From NCBI GenBank assembly GCA_044892525.1, contig CM097886.1, positions 82,584,001 to 82,648,000 on the forward strand: 64,000 nt of DNA, given 5' to 3'. Both the position numbers and the translations under genes were made by a program. The notes below the pieces were generated by a model. That model was not told where the DNA came from, did no database searches, and worked only from the letters and a program-made list of their open reading frames with translations. Every line of letters begins with the position of its first letter. The first letter of the stretch is position 1. The DNA is from Schmidtea polychroa. Its lineage: Eukaryota. Below, piece after piece: positions 1-44,800 of this stretch.

Positions 1-3000
1 GTCCACGTCATCAGAAATCATAAAAGCCGGTTTAAGTCGGCACAAATTTATATTTTGGGTAACACCGTTAATAACGATGTGAGCATTGTTATCCTTAATG
101 TCGATCAATTTGTAAGGCCCCGAATATCTCGGTTTGAGACCTGAATCCGTAATATTACGAAGATAAACGTGAGTTGCGTCCTTGAAGGACTTTGGGACGT
201 ACGGTGTATATGAGGAAGCATAAGAAAACTGTGGGTTGCTATCGATCGAAAGAAAATGATCTCTAGCCATATCTAATTCCTCAAAGGTAGGAGCGTTATC
301 GAAATCAACTAATTCGTTAGGTAACGATGTTGAAGAACCAAAAAGTAACTGTGCCGGTGTAGTTCCGGTAGTCCTGGAGGGTGTGTTACGCCAACCAAGA
401 AGGACAAAAGGTAAAGCTTTAGTCCAATTAAGTCTCGATGAAAGTATTCCAAGAGAGGTCTTCAAAGTACGGTGAAATCTTTCGATCATGCCGTTTGTCT
501 GAGGATGGTAAGCAGTTGAACGGAGGTGTTGTATACCGAGCTTTTCAGTTAGCTGTTGAAATAACTGGGATTCAAACTGAGATCCCCTGTCTGTGATTAT
601 TGATTTCGGAACACCGTATCTAGAAATCCAATGTTGCAAAATTGAATTTGCTACAATTTCAGCAGAAATGTTTTTCAGAGGAATAACTTCAAACCAACGC
701 GTTTTCCGGTCAATCATAGTTAATAAGTAAGAAAAACCGCGATCAGAAGGCAAGGGGCCGACCAGGTCGATGTGAAGAATTTCGAACCTATTTCCGGTCG
801 GATAGTGAATCATCTGTGGCTTAGTGTGTCTAGTGATCTTGTGTTGTTGACAACCGATGCACTGACTCACCCACAATTTAATATCGTGCCTCATTGCTGG
901 CCAAACCACATGTGAATGCAATAGGTTGAAAGTAGCCGACGAACCTGGATGATGTAAGTCGTGAATGGAGTGGAAAGCTAATTTCCGTAAGGAATCGTGC
1001 AAAATCGGTCTTAAAACACCTGATAAAGACGAGTCAAAGTGTACTCCGTCCACGATTTCAAGCTTATCGCCAAAAGCAGCTAGATCTTTTGCCGAAGGTG
1101 GATTGTCGCGGAGGCACTGTACTGGAAAAATCGGATCGTGCAATATAGCGTTGGTACTGCGGGAAAGACAGTCTGCAATAACGTTTTCTTTGCCGGCAAT
1201 GTGGCGTTTTTCGCAAGAAAATTCTGAAATATAACTGATTTGCCTCTGTTGTCGTGGAGATGGGTCTTTCATTCCAAAAAGATAAGTTAGCGGTTTGTGG
1301 TCAGTGTAGATGACAAAAGGACGACCTTCAAGCAAGTGCTTGAAATGTTTGATTGAAAGATATATGCCTAAGAGTTCTCGGTCGAAAGCCGAATATTTCC
1401 GTTGAGCGGAAGAAAGTTTCTTTGAGAAAAACTCTAAGGGTTCAGAAATGTCATTATGTAATTGGTGTAATACTGCACCAATAGCAACGTTTGATGCATC
1501 AGTGGTCAGACTCCAAGGTAAATCAGCATTGGGAAAATGGAGTGTTTGGATTTTCGAAAGTGCCGACTTAGCGTTTTCAAATGCACTGAGTGTGGTATCG
1601 CTCCATGACACTAAAGACTTTTTTGGTTTTGAGACGAGACCTGAAAGAGGTGACAAAATGTCAGAAACCCCTGGAATAAAACGATGACAATAGTTTATCG
1701 TTCCCAAAAAACTTCTCAGTTGTGAAACTGTTTTTGGAAGTGGGAATTTGGCTATGGTATCTAGTCTATCCGGAGGAGGTCGGATTCCATCTGCGGAAAT
1801 TAAATGTCCCAGGAAACGAGTCTCGTGTTGGAAGAAAGTACACTTATCGACGTTTACCTTAAGGTTGTATTGCCGAAGTGCTGTTAAAGTTCTTGTTAGA
1901 TGGGTTTTATGCGTCTCTAAGTCAGGTGATCCGACTAAAATGTCGTCTATGTAAGGAACTGCGAAAGGTAGGTCCATTAAGACTTGATCAATATACCTTT
2001 GAAAGGTCTGTGCAGAATTCCGAAGGCCAAATGGCATATGCACGTACTCGAAAAGTCCGATCGGAGTTATTACGGCTGTTTTTTCTATGTCAGACTCTCG
2101 CACGGGTATCTGATGGTACGCCTTCACGAGGTCGATTGTGGAGAAAGTCTTTGCCTTTGAAAGACGGTGAAGGATATCACTAACAAGCGGCATGCTATAG
2201 GAATCATGTACCGTAATAGCATTAAGGTTTCGATAGTCGCCACACGGACGGAAAGTGCCATCTTTTTTTGGGACCAGGTGCAATGGCGATGACCATGGAG
2301 ATTTAGATCTCCGAATGGTACCCTCATGTAAGAGGTTAGTAAACTCGGAACGTACAAATTCGAGTTTTTCATTCGACAGTGGTCTAATTTTGCATCTAAC
2401 TGGTAAAGATGAAGTTGTGTCGATCGTGTGGCAGTAAAGCGGCTTCGAAACGTCACTTATTGGCGTGTTAAAACACCTATTAATAATATCTAAGGCTATT
2501 TTTGGGTGTTCGATTGTTATAACCGTTTTCGACGGAGTAGTATTTATATCGTCCGTTCCTATCCGTTGTGGATCTTCAAAGATGTTTGAGGGAATAGTGC
2601 TGCAGTTTAATTGATTATTTATCCTTAAAGTGCGTCCGCGGCAATCTACGAGTAGTTCGTTAGTGCTTAAAAAATCAGATCCTAATATGGGGATAATAAC
2701 CTCTGCTATATAAAATTTCCACTCAAATAATTGGTCGGACAGAAATGGCAACGAGAAAGCAATTGTCTTTGAACCTAAAGTCTCAACAACACTACCGTTT
2801 GCGGCCTTCAAAGAAATATCGACAGTGTTGAGGTCTGGAAGGTACTCTTTAGGTAAGATCGACAAGCTGGAACCAGTGTCGACAAGGAATTTTAGTCTGT
2901 TGGAAGGAGACGACAATATATTAAAAGCGTTTGACTCTGCTTCTATTAAAAATAAATCTGATTTCGATGAAATTTTGCCTCCCACCTCTGCCGCTAGAAG

Positions 3001-3015
3001 TGGTGGCATTATAAG
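1..3015 (-). CDS. pol: Pol polyprotein (protease, RT, RNase H, integrase) in the -1 frame relative to ORF1, open to the window edge
   Basis: Hand-translated motifs, all in one frame: FLVDTGSS (DTG 2872-2880), YIDD (1942-1953), TDAS RNase H (~1492-1503), HHCC zinc finger (~850-960), STAYHPQTNGMIERFHRTLK (~430-520), GPYKLI...RLKPAF (~25-120). First in-frame ATG at 3009. Absence from the ORF track is consistent with no stop before the edge. Confidence 0.93.
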
Positions 3016-3021
3016 TTTTTT
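2977..3021 (-). promoter_or_regulatory. -1 programmed ribosomal frameshift signal (A AAA AAC, 7-nt spacer, hairpin)
   Basis: Heptamer 3021-3015 is in the ORF1 frame, and a -1 slip enters the pol frame. GCCACCACTTCT-AGCGGC-AGAGGTGGGAGGC (3007-2977) can form a stem-loop 7 nt downstream. Confidence 0.8.
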
Positions 3022-3053
3022 TGATTGCTTGCTTTAGGTTTTGTGTAATTGGA

Positions 3054-5858
3054 TCAGCCTTCGAAGCATTTTAAGGCTTTATCTCCAAACCTGTCGTGGT
3101 ATATGCACTTGTCAAGTATCTGACAGGATGGTGCTTTATCTCGCCAATTGCAACCTAGATGGCAGAACCGTGCCTTGTTACGAAACTTAAAATGGAAACG
3201 GCACAGGTTCCTGGTTGCAGGGGAAGGTGAACGTTGACGAGTATTTTGCACAAAGTGTGATTTTTGGGCATATTGCCTGTCGTCATTTGTCCGCCTGGTG
3301 GACATGCTATTCTCAAGCTCGCTGATGCGTTTAGTGAGGCCTGTAATAGCGCAAAGTAAGGCTTCTTCGGTCGAAGGTTTTAAAGAAGAAGAAGAAGGTA
3401 AAATTTCGGGGTTAGTGCTGCTACTTAACTGCACAGAGCAAGTTGGTTGCGGACCAAGTGGCACGACTTCGTTAATCTTGTCGGCCATCTTTGCTAGCTC
3501 TACCACGTCTGCTGTTGACGAAAGCGCTAAAATTTGTTGTGCGTGTGGCGGTAAAGCAGACAGAAAAAATTGCCTCAAGAGTTTTTGATCCGCCGCAGCC
3601 TCCGGGTGTATTTGCGTTAGTTCCGCCATAGCGTGTTGCAAGAACTGTGATGGTTTTCTGCTGCCCAAAGTTTGCGTCTTGAAGTATTTAGTGAAGACGG
3701 CAGCTGTAGGTTCCTTAAAAATATCGAGGATTGCCGTACGCAATTCTTCATATGGGTTTTTTACGCTAGTAGGCGAAGTGCGAAGGATCACGGACGAAAG
3801 TTTACTTAATTTCGTCGGCGGAATCAACGGCAAGATGCGACAGTATTTGTCTCGTGAACTGGTTACCTCGATTCCCTCGAGTGCTAGTTCGGTAGCTATC
3901 AGCCAAGTAAGTGGAGAGTTATTCTCATCCAAAAAATATTGACATAAGTACGTTGATCGCTGGTTGTTGGACCTACGCTTATGTTTTGCCTGTTTGGGGT
4001 TGCTGCATGAGTCATTCTCCGAATCGGAGGAACCGCCAGAAAGTGGCAACAAACAATGAATGACGCTGTATGGTGTCACTCCATAGTCGCCCAAGGTACG
4101 ACTGTCGGAAAGGATGTTGCCGTTATACGACAAGAGAAAATGGCATTTGTGATTAGTCAATGTCCTGTAATTTTTAGAAAGACCTTTAATTGTAGTGTCT
4201 GTGTCAACTGAAACGGTTTGTGTCTTATTTGTTCCAGGGTTTTCTATTAATATTTGGAACTTTTTGGGCCCCGGTGCGGCGCTACCCTCTCGTGTGGGCT
4301 GATGCTTATTTATATAATTTTTTATAATTTTATATATGATATCAATAATAATATAAATCAATAATAATATAGTATAATTTAATAATAATATAATAATATA
4401 ATTTAGAGGTAATCGATCTAAGGTACCTGGCGGTGCTGACACGGGCATTGCTCTATTGAGTCTCGATTCGCTGGGAGACGGTTTATTATCGTGAATAAAT
4501 GGCTGTCCCGGTGCACGAGAGTTTAATGTGAAAAAATCATTATTCTGTTGCATTAAGAATTCCTTTGGATTTGGTCGAAGCATGATGCGTTGTGGGGCTG
4601 TGTGTAAGACATCACTCGTTAGCGATTTGTTATTTGGTATATAATTATTGATCGGAGTCATTTTTTGACGATTTTCAACGGCAATCATCTCAGCCAATGC
4701 TTGCCGGGAAACATTAATCGAATCAAAATCTATATCGGCTGTATCTTTATATTTCTGATCGTAATGTGAATTCGGTTTCTCCGAGCCAAATATGCGATTT
4801 ATATCCATTTCGTTTCGATCCTGATACTGACCGTAGTTAAGTACACCGTTGTTGTTTGCCTGTTGATTGATGTTGTGATCGTATGACTGATTATTATTGT
4901 TGTTATTGTTGATTGCGGCGTGGTTTTGAGAATTTAAATGGTAGAAACTTTCCAGCAGAGAATTCGACGAACCAACTGAATTCAAACTGTTCATAAATGA
5001 TTTCTGATCTGAAACTCCTGGCAGGGGAGGTGTGGAATTCAGTGTACTGTGGAATTCAGTAATATCATTAACAGCTGAGCTATTGAAAGCACTGAATAGG
5101 GGATATTCGGATTTAATATCCGATGATTCAGATTGTAATTGAATACTTTTATTGATAAATTTGAAAGACGATTTATTTATCGGGTCAGCAATTTGAAATT
5201 GACCATTTGGGATATGATTATTATCTGTGATATTTGCAGGGGTTGAAATGGAATTACTTGATGATGTAGACTGCTGTAATTCTTTATAATACATATTTAA
5301 ATCCTTACATAGAACGACTACAGGATCCACAGAATCACGATCTGGAATTGTCTGAATTAATTTGATATACTCTTCTCGATTCGATGACAAACAACAGGAA
5401 TGAGCAATTATCAAATGATCTATCAGCCTATCAATATCATGGGATATAAGATTAAATTTTGATGAAAGTTTTAATTCAGAAAATATTTTGGAAAGCATAT
5501 GGAACATATTTTGACGTAATTCCGCTGTTCGTTTATGAGAAACTAACATAGATTGTATTTCCTGTAATCTGGATTTAACAATGATATTAGATAAATAAGT
5601 TTCTAATTGTTCAAATCTTGAACATTGTTCTGGCACTTCTGACACCAATGTTGTACCCGGTAATTTAGCGGCTTTTGACATTCGATTAGAAACAGGAACA
5701 CTTTCATTAAAATATGTCATTGAACCCGCAAACTTTTCTTGCATATCACACAAATATAATAGTGAATTTTCCAACGCAATTAATATCACAAATTTCAATA
5801 TATTTAAAGACAGTTCAATTTTTATACACAAATTAGAAATTTTATGGAAAAAGTTCAT
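3054..5858 (-). CDS. gag: ORF1 polyprotein: N-terminal extension + TM-like segment + ubiquitin-like domain + Gag (934 aa)
   Basis: Aa 610-934 contain Gypsy capsid-like motifs (LGSRKPSQFL, LLRQFFLSALP, LAKMADKI) and C-x2-H-x9-C-x3-C at aa 886-903. Aa 534-609 match ubiquitin by position. Aa 487-511 are hydrophobic. Confidence 0.9.
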   Translation of the reverse strand: MNFFHKISNLCIKIELSLNILKFVILIALENSLLYLCDMQEKFAGSMTYFNESVPVSNRMSKAAKLPGTTLVSEVPEQCSRFEQLETYLSNIIVKSRLQEIQSMLVSHKRTAELRQNMFHMLSKIFSELKLSSKFNLISHDIDRLIDHLIIAHSCCLSSNREEYIKLIQTIPDRDSVDPVVVLCKDLNMYYKELQQSTSSSNSISTPANITDNNHIPNGQFQIADPINKSSFKFINKSIQLQSESSDIKSEYPLFSAFNSSAVNDITEFHSTLNSTPPLPGVSDQKSFMNSLNSVGSSNSLLESFYHLNSQNHAAINNNNNNNQSYDHNINQQANNNGVLNYGQYQDRNEMDINRIFGSEKPNSHYDQKYKDTADIDFDSINVSRQALAEMIAVENRQKMTPINNYIPNNKSLTSDVLHTAPQRIMLRPNPKEFLMQQNNDFFTLNSRAPGQPFIHDNKPSPSESRLNRAMPVSAPPGTLDRLPLNYIIILLLNYTILLLIYIIIDIIYKIIKNYINKHQPTREGSAAPGPKKFQILIENPGTNKTQTVSVDTDTTIKGLSKNYRTLTNHKCHFLLSYNGNILSDSRTLGDYGVTPYSVIHCLLPLSGGSSDSENDSCSNPKQAKHKRRSNNQRSTYLCQYFLDENNSPLTWLIATELALEGIEVTSSRDKYCRILPLIPPTKLSKLSSVILRTSPTSVKNPYEELRTAILDIFKEPTAAVFTKYFKTQTLGSRKPSQFLQHAMAELTQIHPEAAADQKLLRQFFLSALPPHAQQILALSSTADVVELAKMADKINEVVPLGPQPTCSVQLSSSTNPEILPSSSSLKPSTEEALLCAITGLTKRISELENSMSTRRTNDDRQYAQKSHFVQNTRQRSPSPATRNLCRFHFKFRNKARFCHLGCNWRDKAPSCQILDKCIYHDRFGDKALKCFEG

Positions 5859-6115
5859 TTTTTTTGGAATATATAAACAAGCCAGGAAATCTTTTACAAA
5901 ATTTCTACATATAAGTAAACAAAATTACAAAGAATACAAAATTATGTCATTCGATAAAAAATAAACAGATTTTTAAAAATATGTGATTTAAAAAGCTTAA
6001 CGATTTTATAACGTTCGCGTAAGAATTTCAAATAGTCAATTTCTAATAATTAAATGCAGAATAAACAAATTTAGGTTTTATATTATTGTTAGGATTTGTT
6101 CCGTATTTCGCGAAT

Positions 6116-6426
6116 TGTAATGGATGAGGGTGTTGGTCTATGAGAGCCAACACTAAAACTATTGGGAGCCGAATACAGTTTATCTTGATAATGATAACAT
6201 GGCATCGAATTTGCTTTACTCTTCTGAGATTGATTAATAGAGCCTGATTGATAAGTAGAAGTATTAGCTGATCGCACGAATTTTGATTGACTGTTATTGT
6301 GTTCTGTTTGGTCCTTAGTCGCTGGTGACCGCGCATTTATATATATAATATAATATCGTATAATATAATATAATATAGTATAATAGGTATATAGATATTG
6401 TTAAGGCCGTGTAACGGCTCACTACA
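6116..6426 (-). repeat. Putative 5' LTR of the Gypsy element (inner boundary tentative)
   Basis: Starts TGTAG at 6426. TATA-like TATATAAAT at ~6335-6343. Candidate end ...CCATTACA at 6116. The 3' LTR is not in the window and no canonical PBS was found, so the inner edge is unverified. Confidence 0.5.
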
Positions 6427-7036
6427 CATAGCTTTACGGCAACAGGTCGCATGCGTCATGCCACCTTTGCGGAAGTGGCCAAATGGGTGGTCGAGGCATG
6501 GGATAAATTGAATCCGGCGATTATCACCAGTGGATTCAAGAAAGCGGAAATCTTACTGGCAGACAATTATGACAACGACGACTCTGATAGCGATGATGAT
6601 GATGACAACTATGAACTGACTGTACCAGATGAAATTGGTCAATTATTTGAAAGCGATACTGAAGGCTTTAATGGATTTAATGGATTTACAGACTCTGATT
6701 TTTATTGATAAATTTAACTTCATTAATCGACATTTATAACTTAGGCATTTCGTTTTATTGATATAAAGAATTTCTCTATAAATTAAAAAGAAATATTCCA
6801 CGTTATTAAATACTTGCGCTAAATGATTTTTGTTCTCACCTCTTCTCTTTAGTGTCTTTAATTAAACTTGGTGACCACCACCGAACAAAGTAAACATTTC
6901 CGCAGAGGCATGCTTATTACTGTATAAGTGCGACTTAAATAACGGAGCGACTTATATATTAATTTTTCCAAAATTTTAGCAATTTTTTACAATTGCGACT
7001 TATACACAGGAGCGACTTATTACCCGGAAATTACGG
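6427..7036 (+). mobile_element. 3' part of a pogo-type DNA transposon, truncated by the Gypsy insertion
   Basis: HSFTATGRMRHATFAEVAKWVVEAW...GFKKA (6427-6708) parallels the C-terminus of the transposase at 59366-60724. Ends in a TIR ...CTTATTACCCGGAAATTACGG followed by TA (7037-7038). Confidence 0.85.
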
Positions 7037-7038
7037 TA

Positions 7039-7742
7039 ATTAAAAATCAAAATTTTAAAAAATGAATATTTTCTGGGGGAAACTGGTATGGGCGGATGCT
7101 AAATAATGAGACGAGTTCAGCTATAATAAAATAAAATCAATGGGGGGTCCCTAAAAAGAATAAATTACAAAAAACAAACATTAATTAAAAATTAATTAAC
7201 TAATGAAAAACCCGAGCTAATGGGAAACCCGAGCTAATGGAGAACCCGAGCTAATGGGAAACCCGAGACAATGGGAAACCCGAGCGAATTGAGAAATCCA
7301 ATTTTGGGAAGGCAATTAATTTAGCCGGATAAAATAAAAGTAAGAAGAGCCGTCAAAGAAAATGAGCCAATTCCCTTAAATTGAATTAGACCTCCAAGAG
7401 GAAGCCCGGGGGGAAGTAAGACCAAAACTAATTGGCAAAAATAAAGTCAATTACCAAGTGGGTATAAAAGCAACTGGCAAGAAAACAAAACTGCCAGTTG
7501 GTCGAAGAAAAGAAAGTCGAAGTTTAACGAGAGCGAAAAAGGAAATATTAAAGTTGAGATTTGTTGGCAAATTGAAAAGTGCAGACAAAACCTGATTGTA
7601 TCAAGTGTGAGTAAACTAATAAAAAGTGTAAAAGTGTAACTGCATCAGTGTTAATAAAGATTTTGTGTTGGGTCATTTATTTATTTTGAAAAGAACTTAA
7701 AGGAGTCAGACCGTGGTACCGACTTACATTAAAAGCCCAACA
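7039..7742 (+). mobile_element. Solo-LTR-like element, 5' end displaced by the pogo insertion
   Basis: Closely similar to the reverse complement of 39274-40100 apart from its first ~90 bp. Ends GGAGTCAGA...CCCAACA. Contains a 17-18 bp tandem repeat CCCGAG(C/A)(T/C)AATGG (~7200-7275). Confidence 0.8.
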
Positions 7743-7749
7743 AATTTAT

Positions 7750-8890
7750 AGTTTATATATATAATTAGACTATAATTTATACATATATACAAAAATTGAC
7801 GGTTTATACTTTGTATATCTGATTAATTTATAATTTATACTTTACGAGCTTATAATTTATATATAACTAATTGTAATTTACAACTCTTGGGATTCACCAT
7901 CTATATTTATGAATACTGAAATTATAGTTTGCAACCAAATTTACACTATATCATTAATAATTTATATTTTACGAATAATTCAGATTTTATAATTCAAAAT
8001 TATAGCCTGTAACCAATGTTCCCTCTAAGCCATAAGCAGCAGTGCGCGCAAAGTCAGCTGCACTGAGCAGCCTTTAAATACAAATGAGCGGTTGAATTAA
8101 ATATACTGCGCTGAAAATAATTTTGCTGCGCTGGGGAGTTGGAGGTGCTGCGCGCGCGTACGCGCGCAGCTTAGAGGGAACGTTGCCTGTAACCAAAATT
8201 ATACTCCATAATCCACATTTTACACTTTATAAATAAGTTATATATTGAAATTACAGTTTGTAACCAAAATCATACTTTATAAGTTACAATTTATATTTTA
8301 TAAATAAGTTATCTTGAAATTACAGTTTATAACCAAAATAATAGTTTATAATCTATAATTTATATTTTTCGAATAAGTTATATTTGACATTTTGAAATTA
8401 TAGCTGATAACTAAAATTATACTTGGTAATTTATAATTTATATTTTACACATAAGTTATATTTTGAAATTACAGTTTATAACCAAAATTATGGTTTATAA
8501 TTTATGATTTATATTTGTCGAATAAGTTATATTTGATATTTTGAAATTATAATTGATAATTAAAATTATATTTTGTAATTTATTATTTACATTTTATAAA
8601 TAGGTTACATTCGAAATTACAGTTTATAACCAAAATTATGGTTTATAATTTATGATTTATATTTGTCGAATAAGTTATATTTGATATTTTGAAATTATAG
8701 TTGATAACTAAAATTATACTTTGTAATTTATAATTTATATTTTATAAATAAGTTATATTTCATAAATTGCGAACTTATAATTTATATTTTCACAGAAAGT
8801 GCTAAAATATAATGTATAATTTATGAGTGTTATAAATTCATAATTTATAATTTGTAGGTAATATGAACTTATAGTTTTTGGTTTCATAGG
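7750..8890. repeat. AT-rich degenerate minisatellite
   Basis: Recurring units of the type AAATTACAGTTTATAACCAAAATTATA...AATAAGTTATATTTG. Confidence 0.75.
8014..8185. mobile_element. hAT MITE
   Basis: TIRs CAATGTTCCCTCTAAG / CTTAGAGGGAACGTTG. 8-bp TSD CCTGTAAC at 8006-8013 and 8186-8193. Confidence 0.9.
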
Positions 8891-13757: not shown

Positions 13758-16700
13758 ATGCCTAACTCACCACCAGCTAAAAAGCAAAGATTAGAAACCT
13801 ACGAAACTAAGAAAATGAACAAAGATTTTGGTATCACTAATACTGCTAATAATTCAAATGTAATTTTCAAATGTAATTAATTTATGAATTAATTTTAAAT
13901 TTAGGGAACTATTATAAATGGAATAGAAATTGATGAAAATTTATATAGTAGACAACTATATGTAATGGGAAAAGAAGCCATGAAGAATATGACCAAATCA
14001 AATATTTTAATTTCTGGAATGGGTGGTCTTGGAGTAGAAATTGCGAAAAATGTGATTCTTGCTGGAGTGAAATCAGTGACTGTACATGATGAATTAAATG
14101 CAACCGAAGGCTCTCTATCATCACAATATTACTTAAATGAAAACAACATTGGACAAAACAGAGCAACAGCTTGTTTCAAGCAATTAGCAGAATTAAACAA
14201 TTATGTTAACGTCAACGTTAATACAAATCCATTGACAAAAGAAATGTTATTAAATTTTAATATTGTAGTTCTTACAAATATTAAGCAAGATGAAATTAAT
14301 AATATTTCTGGCTTTTGTCATTCGAATAATATAAAGTTAATTATAGCTCGAACATTTGGACTTTTTGGCCAAATTTTCTGTGATTTTGGACCAAATCATT
14401 TAGTGACAGATTCCACTGGAGAAGAACCTTTAACAGTCATGGTTCAAAATATTCAAAATGACGAAGAAGGTTTAGTTGTCTGTTTAGAAGAAACTAGACA
14501 TGGATTTGAAACAGGGGATTACGTAACTTTTTCGGAAGTGAGAGGGATGACAGAATTAAATCAATGCTCACCAAGGAAAATTAAAGTTGAAGGTCCAAAT
14601 TCATTTAAAATTGGCGATACATCAAAATTGTCTCCATATATTGCCGGTGGAATTTGTTCTCAAGTAAAAGTCCCTGAGTATATAAAATTCAAATCGTACG
14701 AAGAAGCATATAAAAATCCAGAATTCGTTTTGAGTGACTTTGCTAAAGTTGATCGATGTAAACAATTGCACATATTTTTTTATGCTATTGAAGAATATCA
14801 AAAATTTCTACAAAATTCCGATGAAAGTTCTAGAAAATTCGATGACTTTATTCAAATTGTGAAATTAGCTTGTGAATTAATCGATTCAAGTATAGAATTA
14901 GATGAGAAATTAGCTCTAAAATTTTACAGCATTTATAACGGAAATGTTATTCCCATGCAGGCTGTTATTGGAGGAATTGCCGCACAAGAAGTTTTGAAAG
15001 CATGTTCATCTAAATTTTTCCCAATTAAGCAATTTTTCTATTTTGATGCTCTTGAATGTTTACCAGATGAACTAATCGATCAGGGTAATGTAATAAATGG
15101 TAATACAGATGCAATTTTAAAAAATGGCAATGCACCACATTTGAATTATAAACTGAATCGTTATAAGAGCCAAATCGAAGTGTTTGGTGTAAAATTCCAG
15201 GAGAAATTATCCAGAATGAAAATTTTTCTTGTTGGAGCTGGAGCTATTGGTTGTGAATTATTAAAAAATTTTGTTATGATGGGCGTTGGAGCATCTATTA
15301 ACGATTCTGATGATGATTCCGGTAAAATTGTTGTCACAGACATGGATTCAATAGAAAAGTCAAATTTAAATCGTCAGTTTTTGTTTCGATCGAAAGATAT
15401 AGGAAAGATGAAATCTCTCACTGCCGCAGAGGCCGCTAAATGTATGAATCCGTATGTTAGAATTGAAGCTTTGGAACTCAAAGTTGGAAAAGAAACCGAA
15501 TCATATTTTAACGACGCGTTTTTTAACGATATTAGTGTAGTAGCAAATGCCTTGGATAATGTCGAGGCTCGCCAATACATGGATAGACGATGCGTTTTCT
15601 ATCTGAAGCCTTTACTCGAATCTGGCACACTTGGAACTAAATGTAATGTACAAGTCGTTCTTCCACATCTCACAGAATCATACAGTTCATCCCAAGATCC
15701 ACCAGAGAAATCCATACCAGTTTGTACAATTAAAAACTTCCCCTATTTAATTGAACATACAATTCAATGGGCCAGAGATTTATTTGAAGGACTTTTCTCT
15801 CAACCAGCTGCTGCTGCAAATCAATTTCTTACAGTAATTATATTTGAGTTTTTATTTATTGCTATATTATTAAAGACCGACCTAGGAATTCTTTTGAACT
15901 AGTTAATAAGTGGTTTTCGTTAAAACTTTGTATAATGTTAATTTACAATTATTTTTTGTAAATAATTTTCTTCTATTATTTGTGTTCAGAAATTGTCTTA
16001 ATGATAATTCTGACGGTAATTTGTTACAGTGCACTATATGTTTTAAAAATGAAATAAAATTTGAGCTATAGATTAAACATGTCAATTTATAAGAACAATA
16101 TTGATTATTCTAATAAGAATAATAAAAATTCGAATTAATCCCCCCCTCGAAATAATTCTCCAACAGCAATTATCATTATTTGAATAAATATATAGTAATC
16201 GCGACAATTGTAGTATTTTGACAGCGGCTTCCTAATCGGTATAGATTATGTAATTTAAATATTAAACTATTATTATTAATTACCTGTAGTAACATGTTGA
16301 GTGTGAACAATACCCTTGTGACCATTTCCGATAAGGGGACAAAATATCTTGTCGGATAAACTTGGACTATATTCGCGCGTAAATACTCACATTTGATATA
16401 TAGTTTTTAAAAGTTGAAGGTTGAAGACACACCATACACCTTCGAGAGTATGACCATTGGATAGAGCTCTTCAGGACCTTTCGAATGATACCCATGACAT
16501 CATTTGACTGTTTATAATTTGAATTGTTTTGATTTTTTTTAATATTTCCTAATTTGGCACTGTCAAGATTCTACAATTGATCCTAATATTGTTTTTATCT
16601 CTCGAATTCGACTTTATATAAATTACTTATTACTTCGAATATAAGCCGCACCCTAATTTTGCACATTAAAAATGTAAGTAAAAAATGTGGCTTATATTCG

Positions 16701-38800: not shown

Positions 38801-41800
38801 TAAAACAATATTTTAAAATAATTATATTTAGTTTTACTGTGATAGATTTCTTATTTTAGTGCTCCGAATCTGTTACTAAATTTTTATAGATAGTATTTAA
38901 TTCAATATTAAAATTTACCAAAGTACTAATTAAGCAAGTGAAGATTTTTTCTCCGTTTCACATCTTTTGAATATTGGAACAGCAGAAACATAATTTTTGA
39001 ATATATATTTAAACAAACATGGAAACAATTTAATTATAAGAAGTCGCCACTCAAACATTCGTGTTACAATATATTTCAACAGTTTTAATAACTAGTATAT
39101 AATAGCTAGAAATTATAGATTTCTGAACAAATTTATTGAATTAACCAGCAATATTTTTATTTTAACAATGTTTTCATACATCTATTCAATTTTTTCTTTT
39201 TAAAAATAATATTTAACTTTTATAATATTTTAATTTAAGTGTTAATCCAAAATTCACTAACTGTGGTTAACGGTGTTGGGTTTTTAATGTAAGTCGGTAC
39301 TACGATCTGACTCCTTTGTGTTCTTTTCAAAATAAATAAACGACCCAACACAAAATCTTTATTTAACACTGATGGAGTTACAGTTTTCACTCACACTTGA
39401 TACAATAAGGTTTTGTTTGCACTTTTTAATTTGCTAACAAATCTCACGCAGGGATAGATCTTCCAACGGGAGATGTCCCTTTCTGGTACGTTCAATTTTT
39501 AAATTATTTATTTTCTACTAACTTTAATGTTTCCTTTTTCGCTCTCGCCAAACTTCTATTTTCTTTTTTTCGACCAACTGGCAGTTTTGTTTTCTTGCCA
39601 GTTGCTTTTATACCCACTTGGTAATTGACTTTATTTTTGCAAATTAGTTTGGGTCTAACTTCTCCCCGGCCTTCCTCTTGTAGCTCTAATTCAATTTAAG
39701 GAAATTGCCCCTTTTTCTTTGACGGCTCGCGTCACTTTTATTTTATTCAGCTAATTTAATTGCCTTTCCAAAATTGGATTGCTAATTCAGGTTTTCTCAA
39801 ATCGCTCGGGTTTTCCATTGTCTCGGGTTTCCCATTAGCTCGGGTTCTCCATTAGTTAATTAATTTTTGTTTTTTGTAATTTATTTCTTTTAGGGACCCC
39901 CCCACCCATTGATTTTATTTTATTATAGTTGAACTCGTCTCATTATTTAGCATCCGCCCATACCAGTTTCCCCCGGAAATTATTCATTTTTAAAAAATTT
40001 TGATTTTTAATTAATATTTTGTATTTTAAATTTTATTTTGAATTTGGTGTTTTTATCGATTTTCACCTCATTTTTGTGCCTCTCCTGTTGAACCCCAACA
40101 ACGGGCTTAAATAATTAACTGTTTTGGTAGAGTTAGTCCAGTTACCATACAATTCAAGACAATTAAAATTTCATTTCATTTATTTTCTTATCAAAATTAT
40201 ACATTTTATAAAATTTTATCAACAATCAATGTGAGAGCAACCTAAATTTATATTGTTGACATTGATTTTTGCGACCATTAATTTTTGGTTTAATCAATTG
40301 TAAACCATTTAAATATTTGAAAGTTAAATTTTAACTTGTCGAAACATTCATATCGGTGTTTAAAAATAAATCTTGCATATTGTGACAACAAAAATCTGAA
40401 ACCTAAAAATTGAAGGGTCCAAAAGAATTGTGATAACCTATTGCAGTGGTTCCCAAATGTTTTCTGCGAAAAGAGTAATAAATTTTACTATTTTCAAAAG
40501 TAAAATTTTTAATTCGATTCCGATTTCTAATTAAATTGTTGGGTTATATTTGTTAAAGTCGGTTCTGACTCTGACTCCTCGTGGTCTTTGTTTCAATTAT
40601 TAAAATAAGACCAACACAGAATACTTTATTAAACGTTAATAAATTTCTATAAAAATTCAATAAGGAAAGTTACCCAACGGAAACTGCATTTTTATTAGAT
40701 TTTGAATATTTGAATATTTTCTTTCTCTTTGTTCAATCTGTGGCTGATTTCTCTTCGATCAAACTGGAGTTTATCTATCAGTGTCATTTCTTTTTATACT
40801 GGTTTTACTCCTAAAATTTTTACAATCAAATAATTTAATTAACCAGTAACCAAAACTACTCAAAATAAAACAATTAAGCAGGCGTCATCTCGCCGTTGCT
40901 CAAAAATCTCCTGTCACTAATTCAATACTATTCCATCTTTATTGATTTTTTGAGTGAGACCTAATCTCATTATCATTTTGATTACCACTTTGATTTTCTA
41001 CATAGCTAATAAACAATTTATATATTTTTTAATTAATTTACCGTATTAGCTTGAAAAAATTACTCATAAAAAATTGAAAATTAAGTGAAATTCAGTCAGA
41101 TAAGCGTTTGGTTAGGTATTTAAAAGTAATACATAGGTTATATTTGTTGGATTATGAAGTTGGTCATAAAATTAAAATTCTTACTCTGATTCCAAGCGTT
41201 TCTTTGATTGACCCACAAATAACAATTAACACTGAAAACTTTATTGAATATCACAAATATTTTCACACTGATACAATTGACTCAACAAGCTAACTATTAT
41301 ACCGTGTTTATTACAACACTATGGTGAGGAATAGCATATTCGTATAACTTTGATTTGAAAAATCTCTCACAACTGAGGAGTTTACTAATTGATAATTTTA
41401 ACTGGTTGTTCTCTGATTTTGACTTGGTTTTACTCGCCTAACTTTATTCTATTATCAACTGAATAAACGATTGCTGATTCTCTTTAATTCTGTTTTCTTT
41501 TTAGTTTCTCTGTTTCAATTTTATTCAAATATTTCTTCTAAATTGTTCTCTCAATGGCTTCTCCAAACTGTTCACTAATACAATTCTCCCACGTCTTTTT
41601 AATTTTTTAACTCGTCATCTATATAGTTTTTTTGCTTCTGCTGTGCCACATCCTTTTATACCTCGTCAATTTGTGACACTTCTGTTTATCTTCAATTCCA
41701 CCATTTTTTTCCAACATGATTTTCCAGTTTTCCCTGCAGCCGAGTTATCTTTGACAGCTGTCGCAATATTTATTATTTTTTCCTTTTGCGGCTCCGGCCT

Positions 41801-44800
41801 GCTTTTGTTTTGTTTCCCTTATCCCTGACAAGCTGTCGAAAAAAGAATATTGTTGTTTTTCTGTATTCCAGATTTAGAAATTCTTTTTCCTTTTTGTATT
41901 AATTTGCCCTTGGTTTTTATTTTCATGTTTGATTTCTTTTGTTTCCTTCATCTTCCTCATTTCTCATTTATTTTTGCTTCCCCTTTCTTTTCTGAGTTCC
42001 CACCGATTGTCCCGTTTGTCATGACGATCTTCCCCCAGGTAATCTTATCTATTTATTTCTAAATTGTGATTTAGCTATCCTCAACATATTCATGATAATA
42101 AATTTAATTAATTTAAACCAAAATTAATATTACGTAAGTGGAGACATATTCGAACTGCAACAGCGCTGCATAAACAAAGGCGCTGGCCTAGACCACATGG
42201 TTGTTCTGACGTGTTTGGTCAAGGTATGAGTTGTTCAGAAGCTTATTAGCATTTTAATCTCCGTAGGAGAATGTCGTTATTTAAATTACATTACTTAAAC
42301 CCCGAATTTAGCGCGAGTCGATTATTTAATAAAAACAAAATGTTAAAAAATATCGCGTTATATTCGGGCTAATACGATATATTTTTTGAATTTAATTTTA
42401 TTATGCTTGCATTCGTCTCAACATTTGTTTTCCGTATATATATATATAGACATTTCCATCGGAATACATCATTTTTATTAATTTAAATTCCTTTTCTGCT
42501 TTTTAGACAACCCCAACAAAATTAAATTTTTGAATATTCTAAAAATCTTCCTTGATATATAAAAATTTCAATCTAAAATATTAATCTGATGAAAATTGTG
42601 CAATTAAAATCTTGTAATTGAAAACTGCATCGAATGCTACAAAGGTTTTTGAAATTAGAAATATATATGATGGTAATTATGTAATCACGTCATCATAAGA
42701 ATTATTAATTTTAGTTATTAAAATCAATGAATTTATAAAATTTTGAGATATTCAGTACCTAATTTTTAATAATCTTGCAAATGATTGTCTGACAATATGA
42801 ATAAAATCTAAATGAATTCTTAAATTGTGAATGTTGAAAATAGTTTATTTAAAATTCTAATTACTTTTTAACACTTGCCGATTTGTTTATTTAAATAGGC
42901 AATATTGTTTATTTGGCCAATTACGTATTATTTATTTTTATTTGTAGAATTTGTTATCTGTATTTGTATGATGTCCCGAATATCGATCATATTGTTTTAT
43001 TAAAATCTATCATTAATTCGATCAAATATTCCATTATAACTATTTTTGTTTTAATTTTAAATTTAAAGTCTTAATAAATGTAAAAATCATTAGTAAATAT
43101 AACGCTACAATTTAAATGCACACTATTTTAATGTATTTGCACACTATAAATGCTAACTATAAATAATAAATGCTAACTATAAATAACTATAAATAATAAA
43201 TACTAACTATAAATAACTATAAATAATAAATGCTAACTATAAATAATAAATGCTAACTATAAATAATAAATGCAAACTATAATAAATAAAAGCTAACTAT
43301 AAATAAATTATTTTCTAACTATGTTTGTTTTATTCATAATAAATCTTTGTCGTTATAGCAATGATGGAATTTAAAAAAAATTCAGAGTTTGACTTTGTTC
43401 CAGAATACTGTTCTTCAGGAAATGAAGATGAAGAACACGTTTTAAAACTTGAAACTCGAAGGAAAAAAATTTGCAAAGACTGGAAAAGAGCAAATGCATT
43501 TGCAAGTTCAAATGAAGCTGAGGATTTTGTAAAAAACGAAAAAGTGTGGTCTTGTTTTCGGACAAATAAATCTGAAGAGGGGAAAAAGAGGTTTTCCCGC
43601 TGTAATCGTGTTAAATTTCGTGGAGAACAATGTTCAGTCTCAGTTTACTTGTGGTACGAGTCCAGCACTAGTGATGTTGTTCTATACAGATCAGGACATG
43701 CACATGATTGTGACAACATCAAAACAAGAACAACAATGACAGATACAGTCAAAGCTGAAATTGACAAATTATTTTGTTTAAAATTGAAACCAAAAGCAAT
43801 GTTAGAACATTTGTCTAACGAAAAATTACCCCTTCCGAGTCAAACACAACTGAATAATCATCTGGCATCCTTGAGAAAGTCCAAATATGGTGCCAACATC
43901 ATTAGCCTTGGAGAATTAAATCAGTGGTTGCAAATTCATTCAGCTGTTCCAGAAGCAGATAACAAAGCATTTGTTGTTGCATATGAAATTAAATATGAGG
44001 ACACTGGATATTTCCGGTACTTCATTTCATCCAAAACAATGTTGAAAATGGCTTTAAACGCTGACAACATTCATGCAGATGTTACATACAAACTTGTATG
44101 GCAAGGCTTCCCTGTTCTTGTTATTGGTACAACAGATCGCAATCGCCAGTTTCATTGTTTTGGTATTGAAGTATGCACCGATGAAAAAACTGAGGACTTC
44201 AAATTTTTGTTTACTGCATTGAAGAATGAAGTTCCTAAAATCTTCAATGCTCCCTTCAATCCAAGCACATTAATTTCTGATGCATCAAAAAGCATCCAAA
44301 ACTCTTTCATAGCAGTGTTTGGCAAAGACGTATTGGTGATTATGTGCTGGGCTCATATGAAAAAAAATGTTCAGAAAAAAGTGGATTCTTTGATTCCAAA
44401 AGATGCAAGACAGGAAATTTTGTCTGACATTGATTCTTTGCAACTCAGTCAATCCAGAGAAGTTTTTGAAAAAGCATCAATTTTATTCTTGAAAAAGTGG
44501 AAGGCAAACTAGGAGTTTGTCGAATACTTCACAGCTGAATGGCTGAAATCAAATAAAAATTGGTTTGAAGGTGCCAAAAAACTAACACCTAGCACAAACA
44601 ATGCCCTTGAGGCATACAACCGAGTCATGAAAGATGAAGATTCTATGAGAGAGCGAGTCTCACTATCAATATTTACTGTTGGATTGGTTGATTGGATTGA
44701 AAGGTGGTCCAACAATTACGAATCTGGAATTAAAGTCATCAAAACCGAACCAGAAATTGATTTGGAACTTTGGACTAGCTCATACCAGTGGGCAAAGTTG

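What the first reader, a model, noticed from the sequence alone, without database searches (positions are those of the whole stretch)
3054..4259. Retrotransposon Gag made as a ubiquitin-like fusion, apparently needing cleavage after GG
Seen: ORF1 aa 534-609 (4259-4032) are exactly 76 residues, FQILIE...SYNGNILSDSRTLGDYGVTPYSVIHCLLPLSGG. They match ubiquitin at the same positions at Q2, I3, G47, L50, D52, R54, T55, L56, D58, Y59, S65, H68, L71, L73, G75 and G76. A CsRn1-type capsid follows in frame, and there is no Met between aa 472 and 743, so Gag has no AUG start of its own. Known: ubiquitin-ribosomal protein precursors and ubiquitin/Ubl inserts in cytopathic pestivirus (BVDV) polyproteins are cut after the di-Gly by host proteases. 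Inference: the element may use a Ubl-GG cassette as a host-processed release site giving a Ser-N-terminal Gag. R72P, R74S, I44S and K48N argue against conjugation and receptor binding, and may point to a non-standard protease. Accessory domains are reported in giant planarian Gypsy elements, so novelty must be tested.
Basis: partly seen in the sequence, partly recalled or inferred. Interest (0 to 1): 0.92.

Follow-up and report, generated by a model that had tools for sequence, protein, structure and literature searches.

The report
Ubiquitin-like module fused before retrotransposon Gag
A Ty3/Gypsy-type retrotransposon in this window encodes its capsid protein (Gag) directly behind an in-frame, diverged copy of ubiquitin that ends in Gly-Gly; 36 related elements have the same layout with the Gly-Gly never changed, which suggests that host ubiquitin-specific proteases cut Gag free from a very variable leader protein.

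Summary
ORF1 residues 534-609 (4259-4032, minus strand) are a ubiquitin-family domain: Pfam PF00240 scores 40.3 bits against a cut-off of 25.4. With an alignment, the predicted fold is a beta-grasp (pLDDT 84-90) that matches ubiquitin and ISG15 structures (TM 0.86-0.91). A Gag with the CsRn1-type CHCC knuckle follows in frame, then pol (PR-RT-RH-IN) in the -1 frame.

The fusion is not peculiar to this copy. A Gag-only search found 36 cluster representatives on metagenome contigs with a ubiquitin-like domain directly upstream of Gag. Gly-Gly is invariant in 37 of 37. Only four columns of the whole alignment are invariant, and these are two of them. The residue after Gly-Gly is never Pro, P4 is Leu/Ile/Val in 36 of 37, and the Ile44 position is not kept hydrophobic. 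One relative's domain is still about 80% identical to ubiquitin. Between two related elements the domain has dN/dS 0.29.

Upstream leaders are unrelated between elements. Several carry fragments of host genes (isochorismatase-like here; H2A, 5'-nucleotidase, CNOT1 and Rrp44 in relatives).

Best reading: a captured ubiquitin serves as a host-cleaved release site for Gag. Cleavage itself is inferred, not shown. I found no published description. This copy has one premature stop in gag.

The parts
1..6426 (-). Ty3/Gypsy-type LTR retrotransposon. It is cut by the window start, so the 3' part of pol and the 3' LTR are missing. The 5' end at about 6426 is inferred.
   Evidence: gag and pol domains. 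A pogo-like transposase fragment on the + strand stops at about 6427, where the element should begin. There is only one copy in the window.
5859..6426 (-). Putative 5' LTR plus primer-binding region and short leader, 568 nt. The boundaries were not verified because there is no second LTR in the window.
   Evidence: In relatives with an LTR pair, ORF1 starts 27-67 nt after the 5' LTR (L011 LTRs 8-384 and 6500-6873 at 91.3% identity; L010). In permuted contigs the end of pol lies 240-520 nt before the ORF1 start.
3009..5858 (-). ORF1/gag as one gene: variable leader, ubiquitin-like domain, linker, Gag. Compared with relatives it has one premature in-frame stop (count only).
   Evidence: The C-terminal end resembles that of relatives.
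4260..5858 (-). Leader, residues 1-533. It is open, has no relative in any search, and is partly low-complexity (N/S-rich).
   Evidence: 0 stops in frame against 35 and 53 in the other frames. No hits.
5637..5792 (-). Fragment (residues 23-74) homologous to the N-terminal quarter of isochorismatase-like (ISOC) proteins. It is a host-gene fragment inside the leader.
   Evidence: PDB 2b34 at E 1.7e-6, also 8rl0 and 8rkz.
4302..4427 (-). AT-rich stretch that encodes a very hydrophobic segment 28 residues before the ubiquitin-like domain. It has GT...AG ends but stays in frame. Its nature is unresolved.
   Evidence: Kyte-Doolittle 2.67 over 19 residues.
4032..4259 (-). Ubiquitin-like domain, residues 534-609, with a beta-grasp fold.
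   Evidence: Pfam PF00240 at 40.3 bits. PDB sequence hits. AF2 with an alignment gives pLDDT 84-90. Foldseek gives TM 0.86-0.91 and rmsd 1.2-1.6 A to ubiquitin and ISG15.
4032..4037 (-). Gly608-Gly609, the proposed cleavage site. Ser610 would become the N-terminus of Gag.
   Evidence: Invariant in 37 of 37. The next residue is never Pro.
3939..4031 (-). Acidic, Ser-rich linker, residues 610-640, predicted disordered.
   Evidence: pLDDT about 35. In the family D+E is 20% in the first 15 residues against 9% in the rest of Gag; linker length is 12-49 residues, median 21.
3204..3938 (-). Gag core, residues 641-885: helical capsid-like domains that include the DUF7041 region.
   Evidence: Pfam DUF7041 at residues 647-716. 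Helical model with pLDDT 80-90. 2475 homologues at E<=1e-3.
3009..3203 (-). C-terminal zinc-knuckle region of Gag with CsRn1-type CHCC spacing, and the end of gag.
   Evidence: C886-X2-H889-X9-C899-X3-C903, followed by a second knuckle with the same spacing as in relatives.
1..3033 (-). pol, an open frame of 1011 codons in the -1 frame relative to gag. It runs off the window start, with about 110 residues missing judging by relatives. No stops within the window.
   Evidence: RVT_1, RNase H, Integrase_H2C2 and rve. Weak RVP at residues 20-124. 60% identical to the pol of L001 and L004.
6427..6708 (+). Neighbour: C-terminal fragment of a pogo/Tc5-like transposase that the retroelement appears to interrupt.
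   Evidence: 33-49% identity to residues 335-446 of the intact pogo-like ORF at 59366-60724.

Best explanation
The element is a CsRn1-like Ty3/Gypsy LTR retrotransposon. Its first gene is a three-part polyprotein: a variable leader, a ubiquitin-derived domain ending in Gly-Gly, and Gag.

Shown:
- The domain is a diverged ubiquitin with a beta-grasp fold.
- It sits in frame directly before Gag in this element and in 36 related cluster representatives.
- Gly-Gly is invariant.
- The tail keeps Leu/Ile/Val at P4 (36 of 37) and Arg/Lys at P5 (29 of 37).
- Pro never follows Gly-Gly.
- The surface used by ubiquitin receptors (position 44) and Lys48 are not kept.
- The domain is under purifying selection (dN/dS 0.29 in one pair).
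- The leader is open but unrelated between elements, and it lies inside the LTR-bounded element.
- In this copy Gag has no AUG of its own.

Inferred:
- Translation starts at an AUG in the leader.
- Host ubiquitin-specific proteases (deubiquitinases of the kind that process polyubiquitin and ubiquitin-ribosomal protein precursors) cut after Gly609.
- This releases Gag with Ser610 at its N-terminus, and a leader-Ubl product.
- The ubiquitin module therefore insulates Gag from whatever is translated upstream. That would explain why leaders can vary freely and can carry captured host-gene fragments.
For: Domain identity: Pfam 40.3 bits; PDB sequence hits; family profile against ubiquitin at 70-75 bits; AF2 pLDDT 84-90 and Foldseek TM 0.86-0.91. 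Origin from ubiquitin: the domain of P0120 is about 80% identical to ubiquitin, with position 1 no longer Met. Clade-wide architecture: 33 relatives by iterated HMM plus 3 by eye. 20 of the 25 best Gag hits carry the domain by HMM, 1 more does by eye, and 4 are too short to tell. Each contig examined has pol next to ORF1. Junction: Gly-Gly is 2 of only 4 invariant columns in 37 sequences. P4 is L31/I4/V1/A1; P5 is R24/K5; P1' is S15, N4, M4, A4, T3, G3 and four others, with Pro 0. Position 44 is hydrophobic in 12 of 34. The tail is not part of the folded core, so its invariance points to recognition by an enzyme. The linker after GG is predicted disordered. Selection: Ubl omega 0.29 (p 0.002) against Gag core 0.11 for P0016 and P0019. 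Leader: nucleotide homology between those two elements (91.6%) starts within 5 nt of the Ubl start, with none upstream. The leader is internal to an LTR pair in L011. No Met between residues 471 and 744 here, and none in the linker of 22 of 33 relatives. Precedent: ubiquitin inserts in cytopathogenic pestiviruses are cut by cellular ubiquitin C-terminal hydrolases to free NS3 (PMC8310069). BVDV polyprotein fragments come back as structural hits.
Against: No protein or transcript data, so cleavage is inferred from conservation alone. The residues before GG vary widely (for example LRLR, FQLL, TKIY and, here, LPLS). Canonical deubiquitinases are known, from general knowledge, to be sensitive to this tail, so the protease may be unusual, or some copies may be poor substrates. 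The window copy has Pro at position 72 (2 of 37) and one premature stop in gag, so it may be decaying. 11 of 33 relatives have a Met in the linker (4 of 37 right after GG), so internal initiation is possible in some. An AT-rich stretch with GT...AG ends lies just upstream of the domain, so a spliced mRNA cannot be excluded. The relatives are anonymous metagenome contigs, and some may be copies of one family.
Confidence: 0.68

Rival explanations
1. The ubiquitin-like domain stays attached to Gag. It works as a cis-acting adaptor, for example for sorting or budding machinery, the proteasome or a chaperone, or it simply aids folding and yield.
For: Uncleaved ubiquitin-like domains are common in cellular proteins (general knowledge). 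The domain fold is conserved under purifying selection.
Against: Such domains do not need a C-terminal Gly-Gly, yet GG is invariant in 37 of 37 while the receptor-binding position 44 is not conserved. Unrelated leaders of 17 to about 870 residues would then remain attached to the capsid protein.
Confidence: 0.12
2. After release, the leader-Ubl product is itself conjugated through its Gly-Gly to Gag or to host proteins. In this reading the module is an element-encoded modifier, and cleavage only exposes it.
For: GG invariance is also what conjugation needs. Two relatives keep the full canonical tail and about 80% identity to ubiquitin.
Against: Position 72 is not Arg in 13 of 37, and it is Pro here. 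Positions 44 and 48 are not kept. From general knowledge, Arg72 matters for E1 activation. Bulky unrelated leaders would be conjugated along with the domain. This rival is not exclusive of the main explanation.
Confidence: 0.08
3. Gag is made without the domain, from a spliced or internally initiated mRNA. The open frame through the leader and Ubl would then be incidental or serve another product.
For: GT...AG-bounded AT-rich stretch just upstream of the domain. Met right after GG in 4 of 37 and somewhere in the linker in 11 of 33.
Against: No Met for 272 residues around the junction here and none in the linker of 22 of 33 relatives. The candidate intron lengths (122 and 128 nt) would shift the frame. 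An incidental domain would not keep GG and a dN/dS of 0.29.
Confidence: 0.07
4. The element's own aspartic protease, not a host enzyme, cuts at the junction.
For: pol encodes a weak retropepsin match, and retroelement proteases process Gag (general knowledge).
Against: An invariant Gly-Gly at P2-P1 after a ubiquitin fold is the signature of ubiquitin-specific proteases, not of retropepsin sites. The protease is made only after a frameshift.
Confidence: 0.03
5. Artefact: a chance read-through fusion of a host ubiquitin gene with a retrotransposon, or an assembly chimera.
For: The leaders contain host-gene fragments, and the relatives come from metagenome assemblies.
Against: The same junction recurs in 36 cluster representatives from at least five samples, always directly before Gag. 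It lies inside an LTR pair in L011. The domain has lost its own Met.
Confidence: 0.02

Closest known systems
Ubiquitin inserts in cytopathogenic pestiviruses (BVDV strains such as Osloss, CP1, CP Rit)
   Same: A host ubiquitin sequence is captured in frame directly upstream of a protein whose N-terminus must be freed. Cellular ubiquitin C-terminal hydrolases cut after Gly-Gly (PMC8310069). BVDV polyprotein fragments are structural hits of the model.
   Different: The pestivirus inserts are sporadic recombinants of an RNA virus with near-native ubiquitin. Here the module is a heritable, diverged (about 30% identity) trait of a clade of LTR retrotransposons, placed before Gag.
Cellular ubiquitin-fusion precursors: polyubiquitin, ubiquitin-eL40 and ubiquitin-eS31
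   Same: Ubiquitin-GG-X precursors processed by host deubiquitinases. The family profile matches these chains at 70-75 bits.
   Different: The cellular fusions start with ubiquitin's own Met and keep an almost invariant sequence. Here the domain is internal, has lost Met1, and keeps mainly the fold core and the tail.
CsRn1 clade of Ty3/Gypsy elements (CsRn1, PwRn1, AgCR)
   Same: Gag with the CX2HX9CX3C (CHCC) signature, pol ordered PR-RT-RH-IN, and gag/pol overlap with a -1 frame (PMC2582038).
   Different: The paper read here on those elements does not mention a ubiquitin-like domain or a long coding leader. [quoted passage not shown]
Giant planarian Gypsy elements (Burro) with accessory domains
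   Same: LTR retrotransposons that carry host-like accessory domains inside a polyprotein (PMC6431247).
   Different: Burro has a retrotrans_gag Gag with CCHC knuckles at the N-terminus of a polyprotein of about 4,900 residues, and no ubiquitin module is described. Here Gag is CHCC/DUF7041-type and the extras lie upstream of Gag, behind a Gly-Gly junction.
Virus-encoded ubiquitins (baculovirus v-ubi, giant-virus ubiquitins)
   Same: Ubiquitin genes captured by mobile genomes. They are structural hits of the model.
   Different: These are free-standing or differently fused genes and are not placed as a junction before a capsid protein.

Membership tests
Ubiquitin family domain (Pfam PF00240) | Score at or above the curated Pfam cut-off | tested here: met
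   40.3 bits against 25.4 for residues 534-609; 34 bits in the whole ORF.
Ubiquitin family domain (Pfam PF00240) | Beta-grasp fold | tested here: met
   Prediction only. AF2 with alignment A1 gives pLDDT 84-90 and the order strand, strand, helix, strand, strand, short helix, strand. Foldseek gives TM 0.86-0.91 to ubiquitin and ISG15. The single-sequence model was uninformative.
Ubiquitin family domain (Pfam PF00240) | Descent from ubiquitin proper rather than from another modifier | tested here: met
   The domain of relative P0120 is about 80% identical to ubiquitin. The family profile hits ubiquitin best.
Conjugation-competent ubiquitin | Arg72, the Ile44 patch and Lys48 retained | tested here: not met
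   The window has P72, S44 and N48. In the family, position 44 is hydrophobic in 12 of 34 and position 48 is Lys in 11 of 34.
Ubiquitin-fusion precursors cut by host deubiquitinases | Ubiquitin(-like) domain fused in frame upstream of another protein, with Gly-Gly at the junction | tested here: met
   GG in 37 of 37.
Ubiquitin-fusion precursors cut by host deubiquitinases | Residue after Gly-Gly is not Pro | tested here: met
   Pro in 0 of 37; Ser in 15, including the window. That Pro blocks cleavage is general knowledge.
Ubiquitin-fusion precursors cut by host deubiquitinases | Canonical tail before Gly-Gly | tested here: not met
   The window has L-P-L-S. P4 Leu is kept (31 of 37), P5 is Arg/Lys in 29 of 37, and P3 is variable. 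The full canonical tail appears in only a few relatives.
Ubiquitin-fusion precursors cut by host deubiquitinases | Cleavage actually occurs | not testable with these tools
   No proteomic or expression data are available here.
CsRn1 clade of Ty3/Gypsy LTR retrotransposons | Gag with the CHCC signature CX2HX9CX3C | tested here: met
   C886-H889-C899-C903. Definition from PMC2582038. Relatives have two such knuckles.
CsRn1 clade of Ty3/Gypsy LTR retrotransposons | pol ordered PR-RT-RH-IN; gag and pol fused, separate, or overlapping by -1 | tested here: met
   Domain order. The pol frame is -1 relative to gag (coordinates).
CsRn1 clade of Ty3/Gypsy LTR retrotransposons | tRNA-Trp primer-binding site | not tested
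   No tRNA gene in the window and no reference sequence from a tool. No shared motif was found after the LTR.
CsRn1 clade of Ty3/Gypsy LTR retrotransposons | RT groups with CsRn1 in a phylogeny | not tested
   No named CsRn1-clade sequences could be obtained with the tools.
CsRn1 clade of Ty3/Gypsy LTR retrotransposons | Flanking LTRs | not testable with these tools
   The 3' end lies beyond the window. LTR pairs were found in relatives L011 and L010.
DUF7041 (Pfam PF23055) Gag-like proteins | Score at or above the curated cut-off | tested here: inconclusive
   The window scores 23.9 against 28. Relatives P0014 and P0017 score 40.8 and 42.5. 20 of 37 match at E<=1e-3.
Burro-type giant planarian Gypsy elements | retrotrans_gag Gag with CCHC knuckles inside a multi-thousand-residue polyprotein | tested here: not met
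   There is no retrotrans_gag hit, the knuckles are CHCC, and ORF1 has 934 residues. Description from PMC6431247.

The most novel reading that the evidence does not exclude
The ubiquitin module may make this clade a natural carrier of genes. Because Gag is cut free after Gly-Gly, any sequence that lands in frame between the 5' LTR and the module is tolerated and is expressed as a leader-Ubl fusion in the same amount as Gag. The elements therefore pick up, shuffle and spread fragments of host genes. Fragments seen are isochorismatase-like here; histone H2A; 5'-nucleotidase; cohesin SCC3; and CNOT1 together with Rrp44 in one leader. Several of these recur on second contigs. Some of these products may act on the host or on the element's own cycle.
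Probability: 0.3. Interest if true: 0.85.

Novelty: new variant of a known kind. Interest (0 to 1): 0.78.

Why it matters
LTR retrotransposons and retroviruses are normally thought to free their structural proteins with their own protease, and to start Gag at its own AUG. A whole clade that instead places a captured ubiquitin before Gag would be a stable, inherited use of the host's ubiquitin-processing enzymes by a retroelement. Until now that trick is known from sporadic pestivirus recombinants and from cellular ubiquitin-fusion genes. The divergence of the module is also informative: the fold, Leu73 and Gly-Gly are kept, while the receptor surface is lost. That is a natural record of what a ubiquitin needs in order to be recognised by the processing enzymes and nothing else. 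The variable leaders with host-gene fragments point to a possible route of exon capture and shuffling by retroelements. The arrangement is easy to recognise by sequence (ubiquitin domain, Gly-Gly, acidic linker, DUF7041/CHCC Gag), so it can be added to transposon annotation.

Tried and rejected
- Word-indexed protein searches. Ubl+Gag gave only 11 Gag-only hits. Full ORF1 gave nothing. The Ubl alone had no candidates. The exhaustive Gag-only search found the relatives.
- The exact look-up of ORF1 and of the pogo ORF found nothing on record, so the host organism stays unknown. Cluster look-ups gave no organism names.
- Single-sequence AF2 was uninformative (pLDDT 38).
- Retracted: I first read P0001 as a Ubl-less relative whose Met sits exactly where the post-GG residue lies in P0035. 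Its locus L006 shows the Ubl is present upstream but interrupted by two in-frame stops, so this argument is withdrawn.
- LTR and primer-binding site of the window copy. There is no second LTR in the window, no tRNA gene, and no shared motif after the LTR. A short TTGTTTA-type motif upstream of ORF1 starts lies in the LTR of L010 and is too AT-rich to weigh.
- L004 has no LTR pair.
- Intron hypothesis for 4302-4427. GT...AG ends exist, but the lengths 122 and 128 nt break the frame, and there are no transcript data.
- A transmembrane anchor as a general feature. A strongly hydrophobic segment occurs upstream of the Ubl in only 10 of 25 leaders.
- Rfam found nothing in the window.
- Literature searches for a ubiquitin-Gag fusion in retrotransposons found no description. 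The library does not hold most subscription journals, so this is not proof of novelty.


Full report
**1. What is in the window**

The minus strand of 1-6426 holds one copy of a Ty3/Gypsy-type LTR retrotransposon. It is cut by the window start.
- ORF1 is a 934-codon open frame that starts at 5858.
- Downstream, in the -1 frame, a second frame is open for 1011 codons to the window edge. It carries a weak retropepsin match, RVT_1, RNase H, the integrase zinc-binding domain and the integrase core.
- No other copy is in the window.
- On the plus strand at 6427-6708 lies the C-terminal end of a pogo-like transposase. Its homology stops at about 6427. The retroelement therefore probably inserted into that transposon, and its 5' end is near 6426, 568 nt before the ORF1 start.

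**2. The observation**

Residues 534-609 of ORF1 (4259-4032) are 76 residues ending in Gly-Gly.
- They pass the curated Pfam threshold for the ubiquitin family (40.3 against 25.4 bits).
- They align with ubiquitin, polyubiquitin and ISG15 chains of the PDB, with the final Gly-Gly on ubiquitin's Gly75-Gly76.
- Folded alone, the sequence gave a useless model.
- With an alignment of 18 relatives, AlphaFold2 gave pLDDT 84-90 over the domain with the secondary-structure order of a beta-grasp.
- Foldseek matched ubiquitin and ISG15 structures at TM 0.86-0.91 and rmsd 1.2-1.6 A over 77-78 columns.
- The 30 residues after Gly-Gly are predicted disordered, and a helical Gag follows.
- Gag has the CX2HX9CX3C knuckle that defines CsRn1-like elements (PMC2582038), and a DUF7041 match just under threshold.
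- ORF1 has no Met between residues 471 and 744.

**3. The fusion is a property of a clade**

I searched 1.84 billion representative proteins with Gag alone (residues 610-934), so that any ubiquitin domain in the hits would be an independent observation. The search gave 2475 hits, 23 of them below E 1e-30.
- Many of the best hits have N-terminal extensions.
- Pfam found a ubiquitin domain directly before Gag in several of them.
- An HMM iterated in the sandbox found it in 33 representatives, and all 33 end in Gly-Gly.
- Three more are visible by eye.
- Of the 25 best Gag hits, 20 carry the domain by HMM, one more by eye, and 4 are too short at the N-terminus to tell. The share falls among more distant hits.
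- In the 37-sequence alignment only four columns are invariant: the two glycines and two Gag residues.

The relatives are plain ORFs on metagenome contigs from ENA, JGI and Logan, with no organism names. Every contig examined has pol next to ORF1.

**4. What is and is not conserved in the domain**

| Position | Residues among 37 sequences |
|---|---|
| P2, P1 | Gly-Gly, 37 |
| P4 | Leu 31, Ile 4, Val 1, Ala 1 |
| P5 | Arg 24, Lys 5 (Pro in the window; Pro is 2 of 37) |
| P3 | variable |
| P1' | Ser 15, Asn 4, Met 4, Ala 4, Thr 3, Gly 3, and one each of Val, Asp, Lys, Gln; never Pro |

- The core hydrophobic positions are kept.
- Position 44 is hydrophobic in only 12 of 34, and position 48 is Lys in 11 of 34.
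- The linker after Gly-Gly is acidic (D+E 20% against 9% in the rest of Gag) and 12-49 residues long.
- One relative (P0120) is still about 80% identical to ubiquitin, with position 1 changed from Met. The module therefore descends from ubiquitin itself.
- The family profile matches single ubiquitin chains at 70-75 bits.
- Between two related elements (P0016 and P0019), the Nei-Gojobori estimate gives omega 0.29 for the domain (p 0.002 against neutrality), 0.35 for the linker and 0.11 for the Gag core.

The flexible tail is not needed for the fold. An invariant Gly-Gly with a conserved P4 Leu and no Pro at P1' is what a ubiquitin-specific protease would require. The loss of the receptor surface argues against ordinary ubiquitin signalling.

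**5. The leader**

Upstream of the domain the sequences are unrelated.
- P0016 and P0019 share 91.6% nucleotide identity from within 5 nt of the domain start to the end of gag, and nothing upstream. At protein level the leader shows no similarity, the domain is 80% identical and Gag is 92% identical.
- Leaders range from 17 to about 870 residues.
- They are nevertheless coding. The window leader has 0 stops in frame against 35 and 53 in the other frames.
- They lie inside the element. In L011 a true LTR pair (8-384 and 6500-6873, 91.3% identical) encloses a leader ORF that starts 27 nt after the 5' LTR, then the Ubl-Gag ORF, then pol. This old copy has a frame change between leader and Ubl-Gag.
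- In four permuted or tandem contigs, the end of pol lies 240-520 nt before the ORF1 start.

Several leaders contain fragments of host genes:
- the N-terminal quarter of an isochorismatase-like protein in the window, residues 23-74 (PDB 2b34, E 1.7e-6);
- histone H2A (P0023, and again in P0185);
- 5'-nucleotidase (P0022, P0184);
- cohesin SCC3 HEAT repeats (P0019);
- Rrp44 CSD1 together with the CNOT1 CAF1-binding domain in one leader (P0072, P0188).

**6. Mechanism proposed**

Translation begins in the leader. Host ubiquitin-specific proteases cut after Gly609. Gag is released with Ser610 at its N-terminus, and a leader-Ubl product is left. The steps shown are the architecture, the fold, the conservation pattern, the selection and the position of the leader inside the element. 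Cleavage, the enzyme and the start codon used are inferred.

The closest precedent is the ubiquitin insert of cytopathogenic pestiviruses, where cellular ubiquitin C-terminal hydrolases generate the N-terminus of NS3 (PMC8310069). BVDV polyprotein fragments and viral ubiquitins are structural hits of the model. The cellular precedents are polyubiquitin and the ubiquitin-ribosomal protein fusions.

The rivals are scored in their own section:
- an uncleaved adaptor domain;
- conjugation of the released module;
- a Gag-only mRNA;
- cleavage by the element's own protease;
- an artefact.

The main weakness of the proposal is the diversity of the four residues before Gly-Gly, including Pro72 in this copy.

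**7. State of this copy**

Counts only. gag has one premature in-frame stop relative to its relatives. The leader and the ubiquitin-like domain have none. pol has none in the 1011 codons present, and its 3' end lies beyond the window. Among relatives, L006 has two in-frame stops in the leader/Ubl part of ORF1.

**8. Novelty**

Five full-text searches found no description of a ubiquitin or ubiquitin-like domain fused to a retrotransposon Gag. The review of giant planarian Gypsy elements lists other accessory domains and a different Gag (PMC6431247). The CsRn1-clade paper does not mention such a domain. I file the finding as a new variant of a known kind: a CsRn1-like Ty3/Gypsy lineage that uses the known ubiquitin-fusion processing principle. 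Membership in the CsRn1 clade rests on the CHCC signature, the pol order and the -1 frame. [quoted passage not shown]

- It should have been a count only.
- One search printed shares by column for the domain, with the two commonest residues per column.
- The profile HMMs built in the sandbox were used only for searching.

Noticed in passing
window 13965-15902 (+): A long exon of a ubiquitin-activating enzyme E1 (UBA1-like: ThiF, E1_FCCH, E1_4HB, start of SCCH) lies about 8 kb from the ubiquitin-Gag element. This is probably coincidence.
   Followed up: no
window 6427-6708 (+): C-terminal fragment of a pogo/Tc5-like transposase. Its homology ends where the retroelement should begin, which suggests a nested insertion and places the element's 5' end near 6426.
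   Followed up: yes
window 5637-5792 (-): The first part of ORF1 (residues 23-74) is homologous to the N-terminus of isochorismatase-like proteins (PDB 2b34, 8rl0, 8rkz). It is a host-gene fragment inside the element's leader.
   Followed up: partly
window 4302-4427 (-): AT-rich stretch inside ORF1 with GT...AG ends. It stays in frame and encodes the most hydrophobic 19-mer of the protein, 28 residues before the ubiquitin-like domain. Similar hydrophobic stretches occur in 10 of 25 relatives' leaders. It could be a membrane anchor, a retained intron or translated filler; this is unresolved.
   Followed up: partly
window 43361-44512 (+) and 59366-60724 (+): A MULE transposase ORF (383 aa) and an intact pogo/Tc5-like DDE_1 transposase ORF (452 aa, with Brinker and HTH_Tnp_Tc5 domains).
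   Followed up: no
window 7917-8789; 7037-7742 and 39274-40013: Very AT-rich tandem repeats (GC about 15%) just beyond the element. There is also a dispersed repeat present twice in inverted orientation at 84-85% identity.
   Followed up: no
window 61384-62355 (-): A 323-residue ORF with no Pfam match, in a GC-richer patch next to the pogo-like ORF.
   Followed up: no
L005 987-3092; P0185: A related element whose leader begins with most of a histone H2A fold, followed by about 190 residues, the ubiquitin-like domain with Gly-Gly, and Gag. A second contig carries the same arrangement.
   Followed up: partly
P0072 and P0188: One leader carries fragments of two unrelated host genes: Rrp44 cold-shock domain at residues 289-333 and the CNOT1 CAF1-binding domain at 437-548. 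Both proteins of the RNA-decay machinery are represented, and the arrangement is seen on two contigs.
   Followed up: no
L008 2797 / L009 2693: Two elements with 91.6% identical gag lose all nucleotide similarity within 5 nt of the start of the ubiquitin-like domain. This suggests a recombination or capture boundary exactly there.
   Followed up: partly
L001 1-10324: The contig is two head-to-tail units of 5076 bp of one element (gag, pol, about 270 nt, gag, pol). It is either a tandem array or an assembly of a circular or LTR-collapsed form.
   Followed up: no
L010 9871-12567 (-): A protein-primed type B DNA polymerase (DNA_pol_B_2) ORF lies near a related element. It may belong to a Polinton/Maverick-like element in the same unknown host.
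   Followed up: no
L011 411-1724: The leader ORF of an LTR-bounded relative has a marginal WWE-domain match (21.9 against 21.1 bits). WWE is a domain of ubiquitin-ligase and PARP proteins.
   Followed up: no
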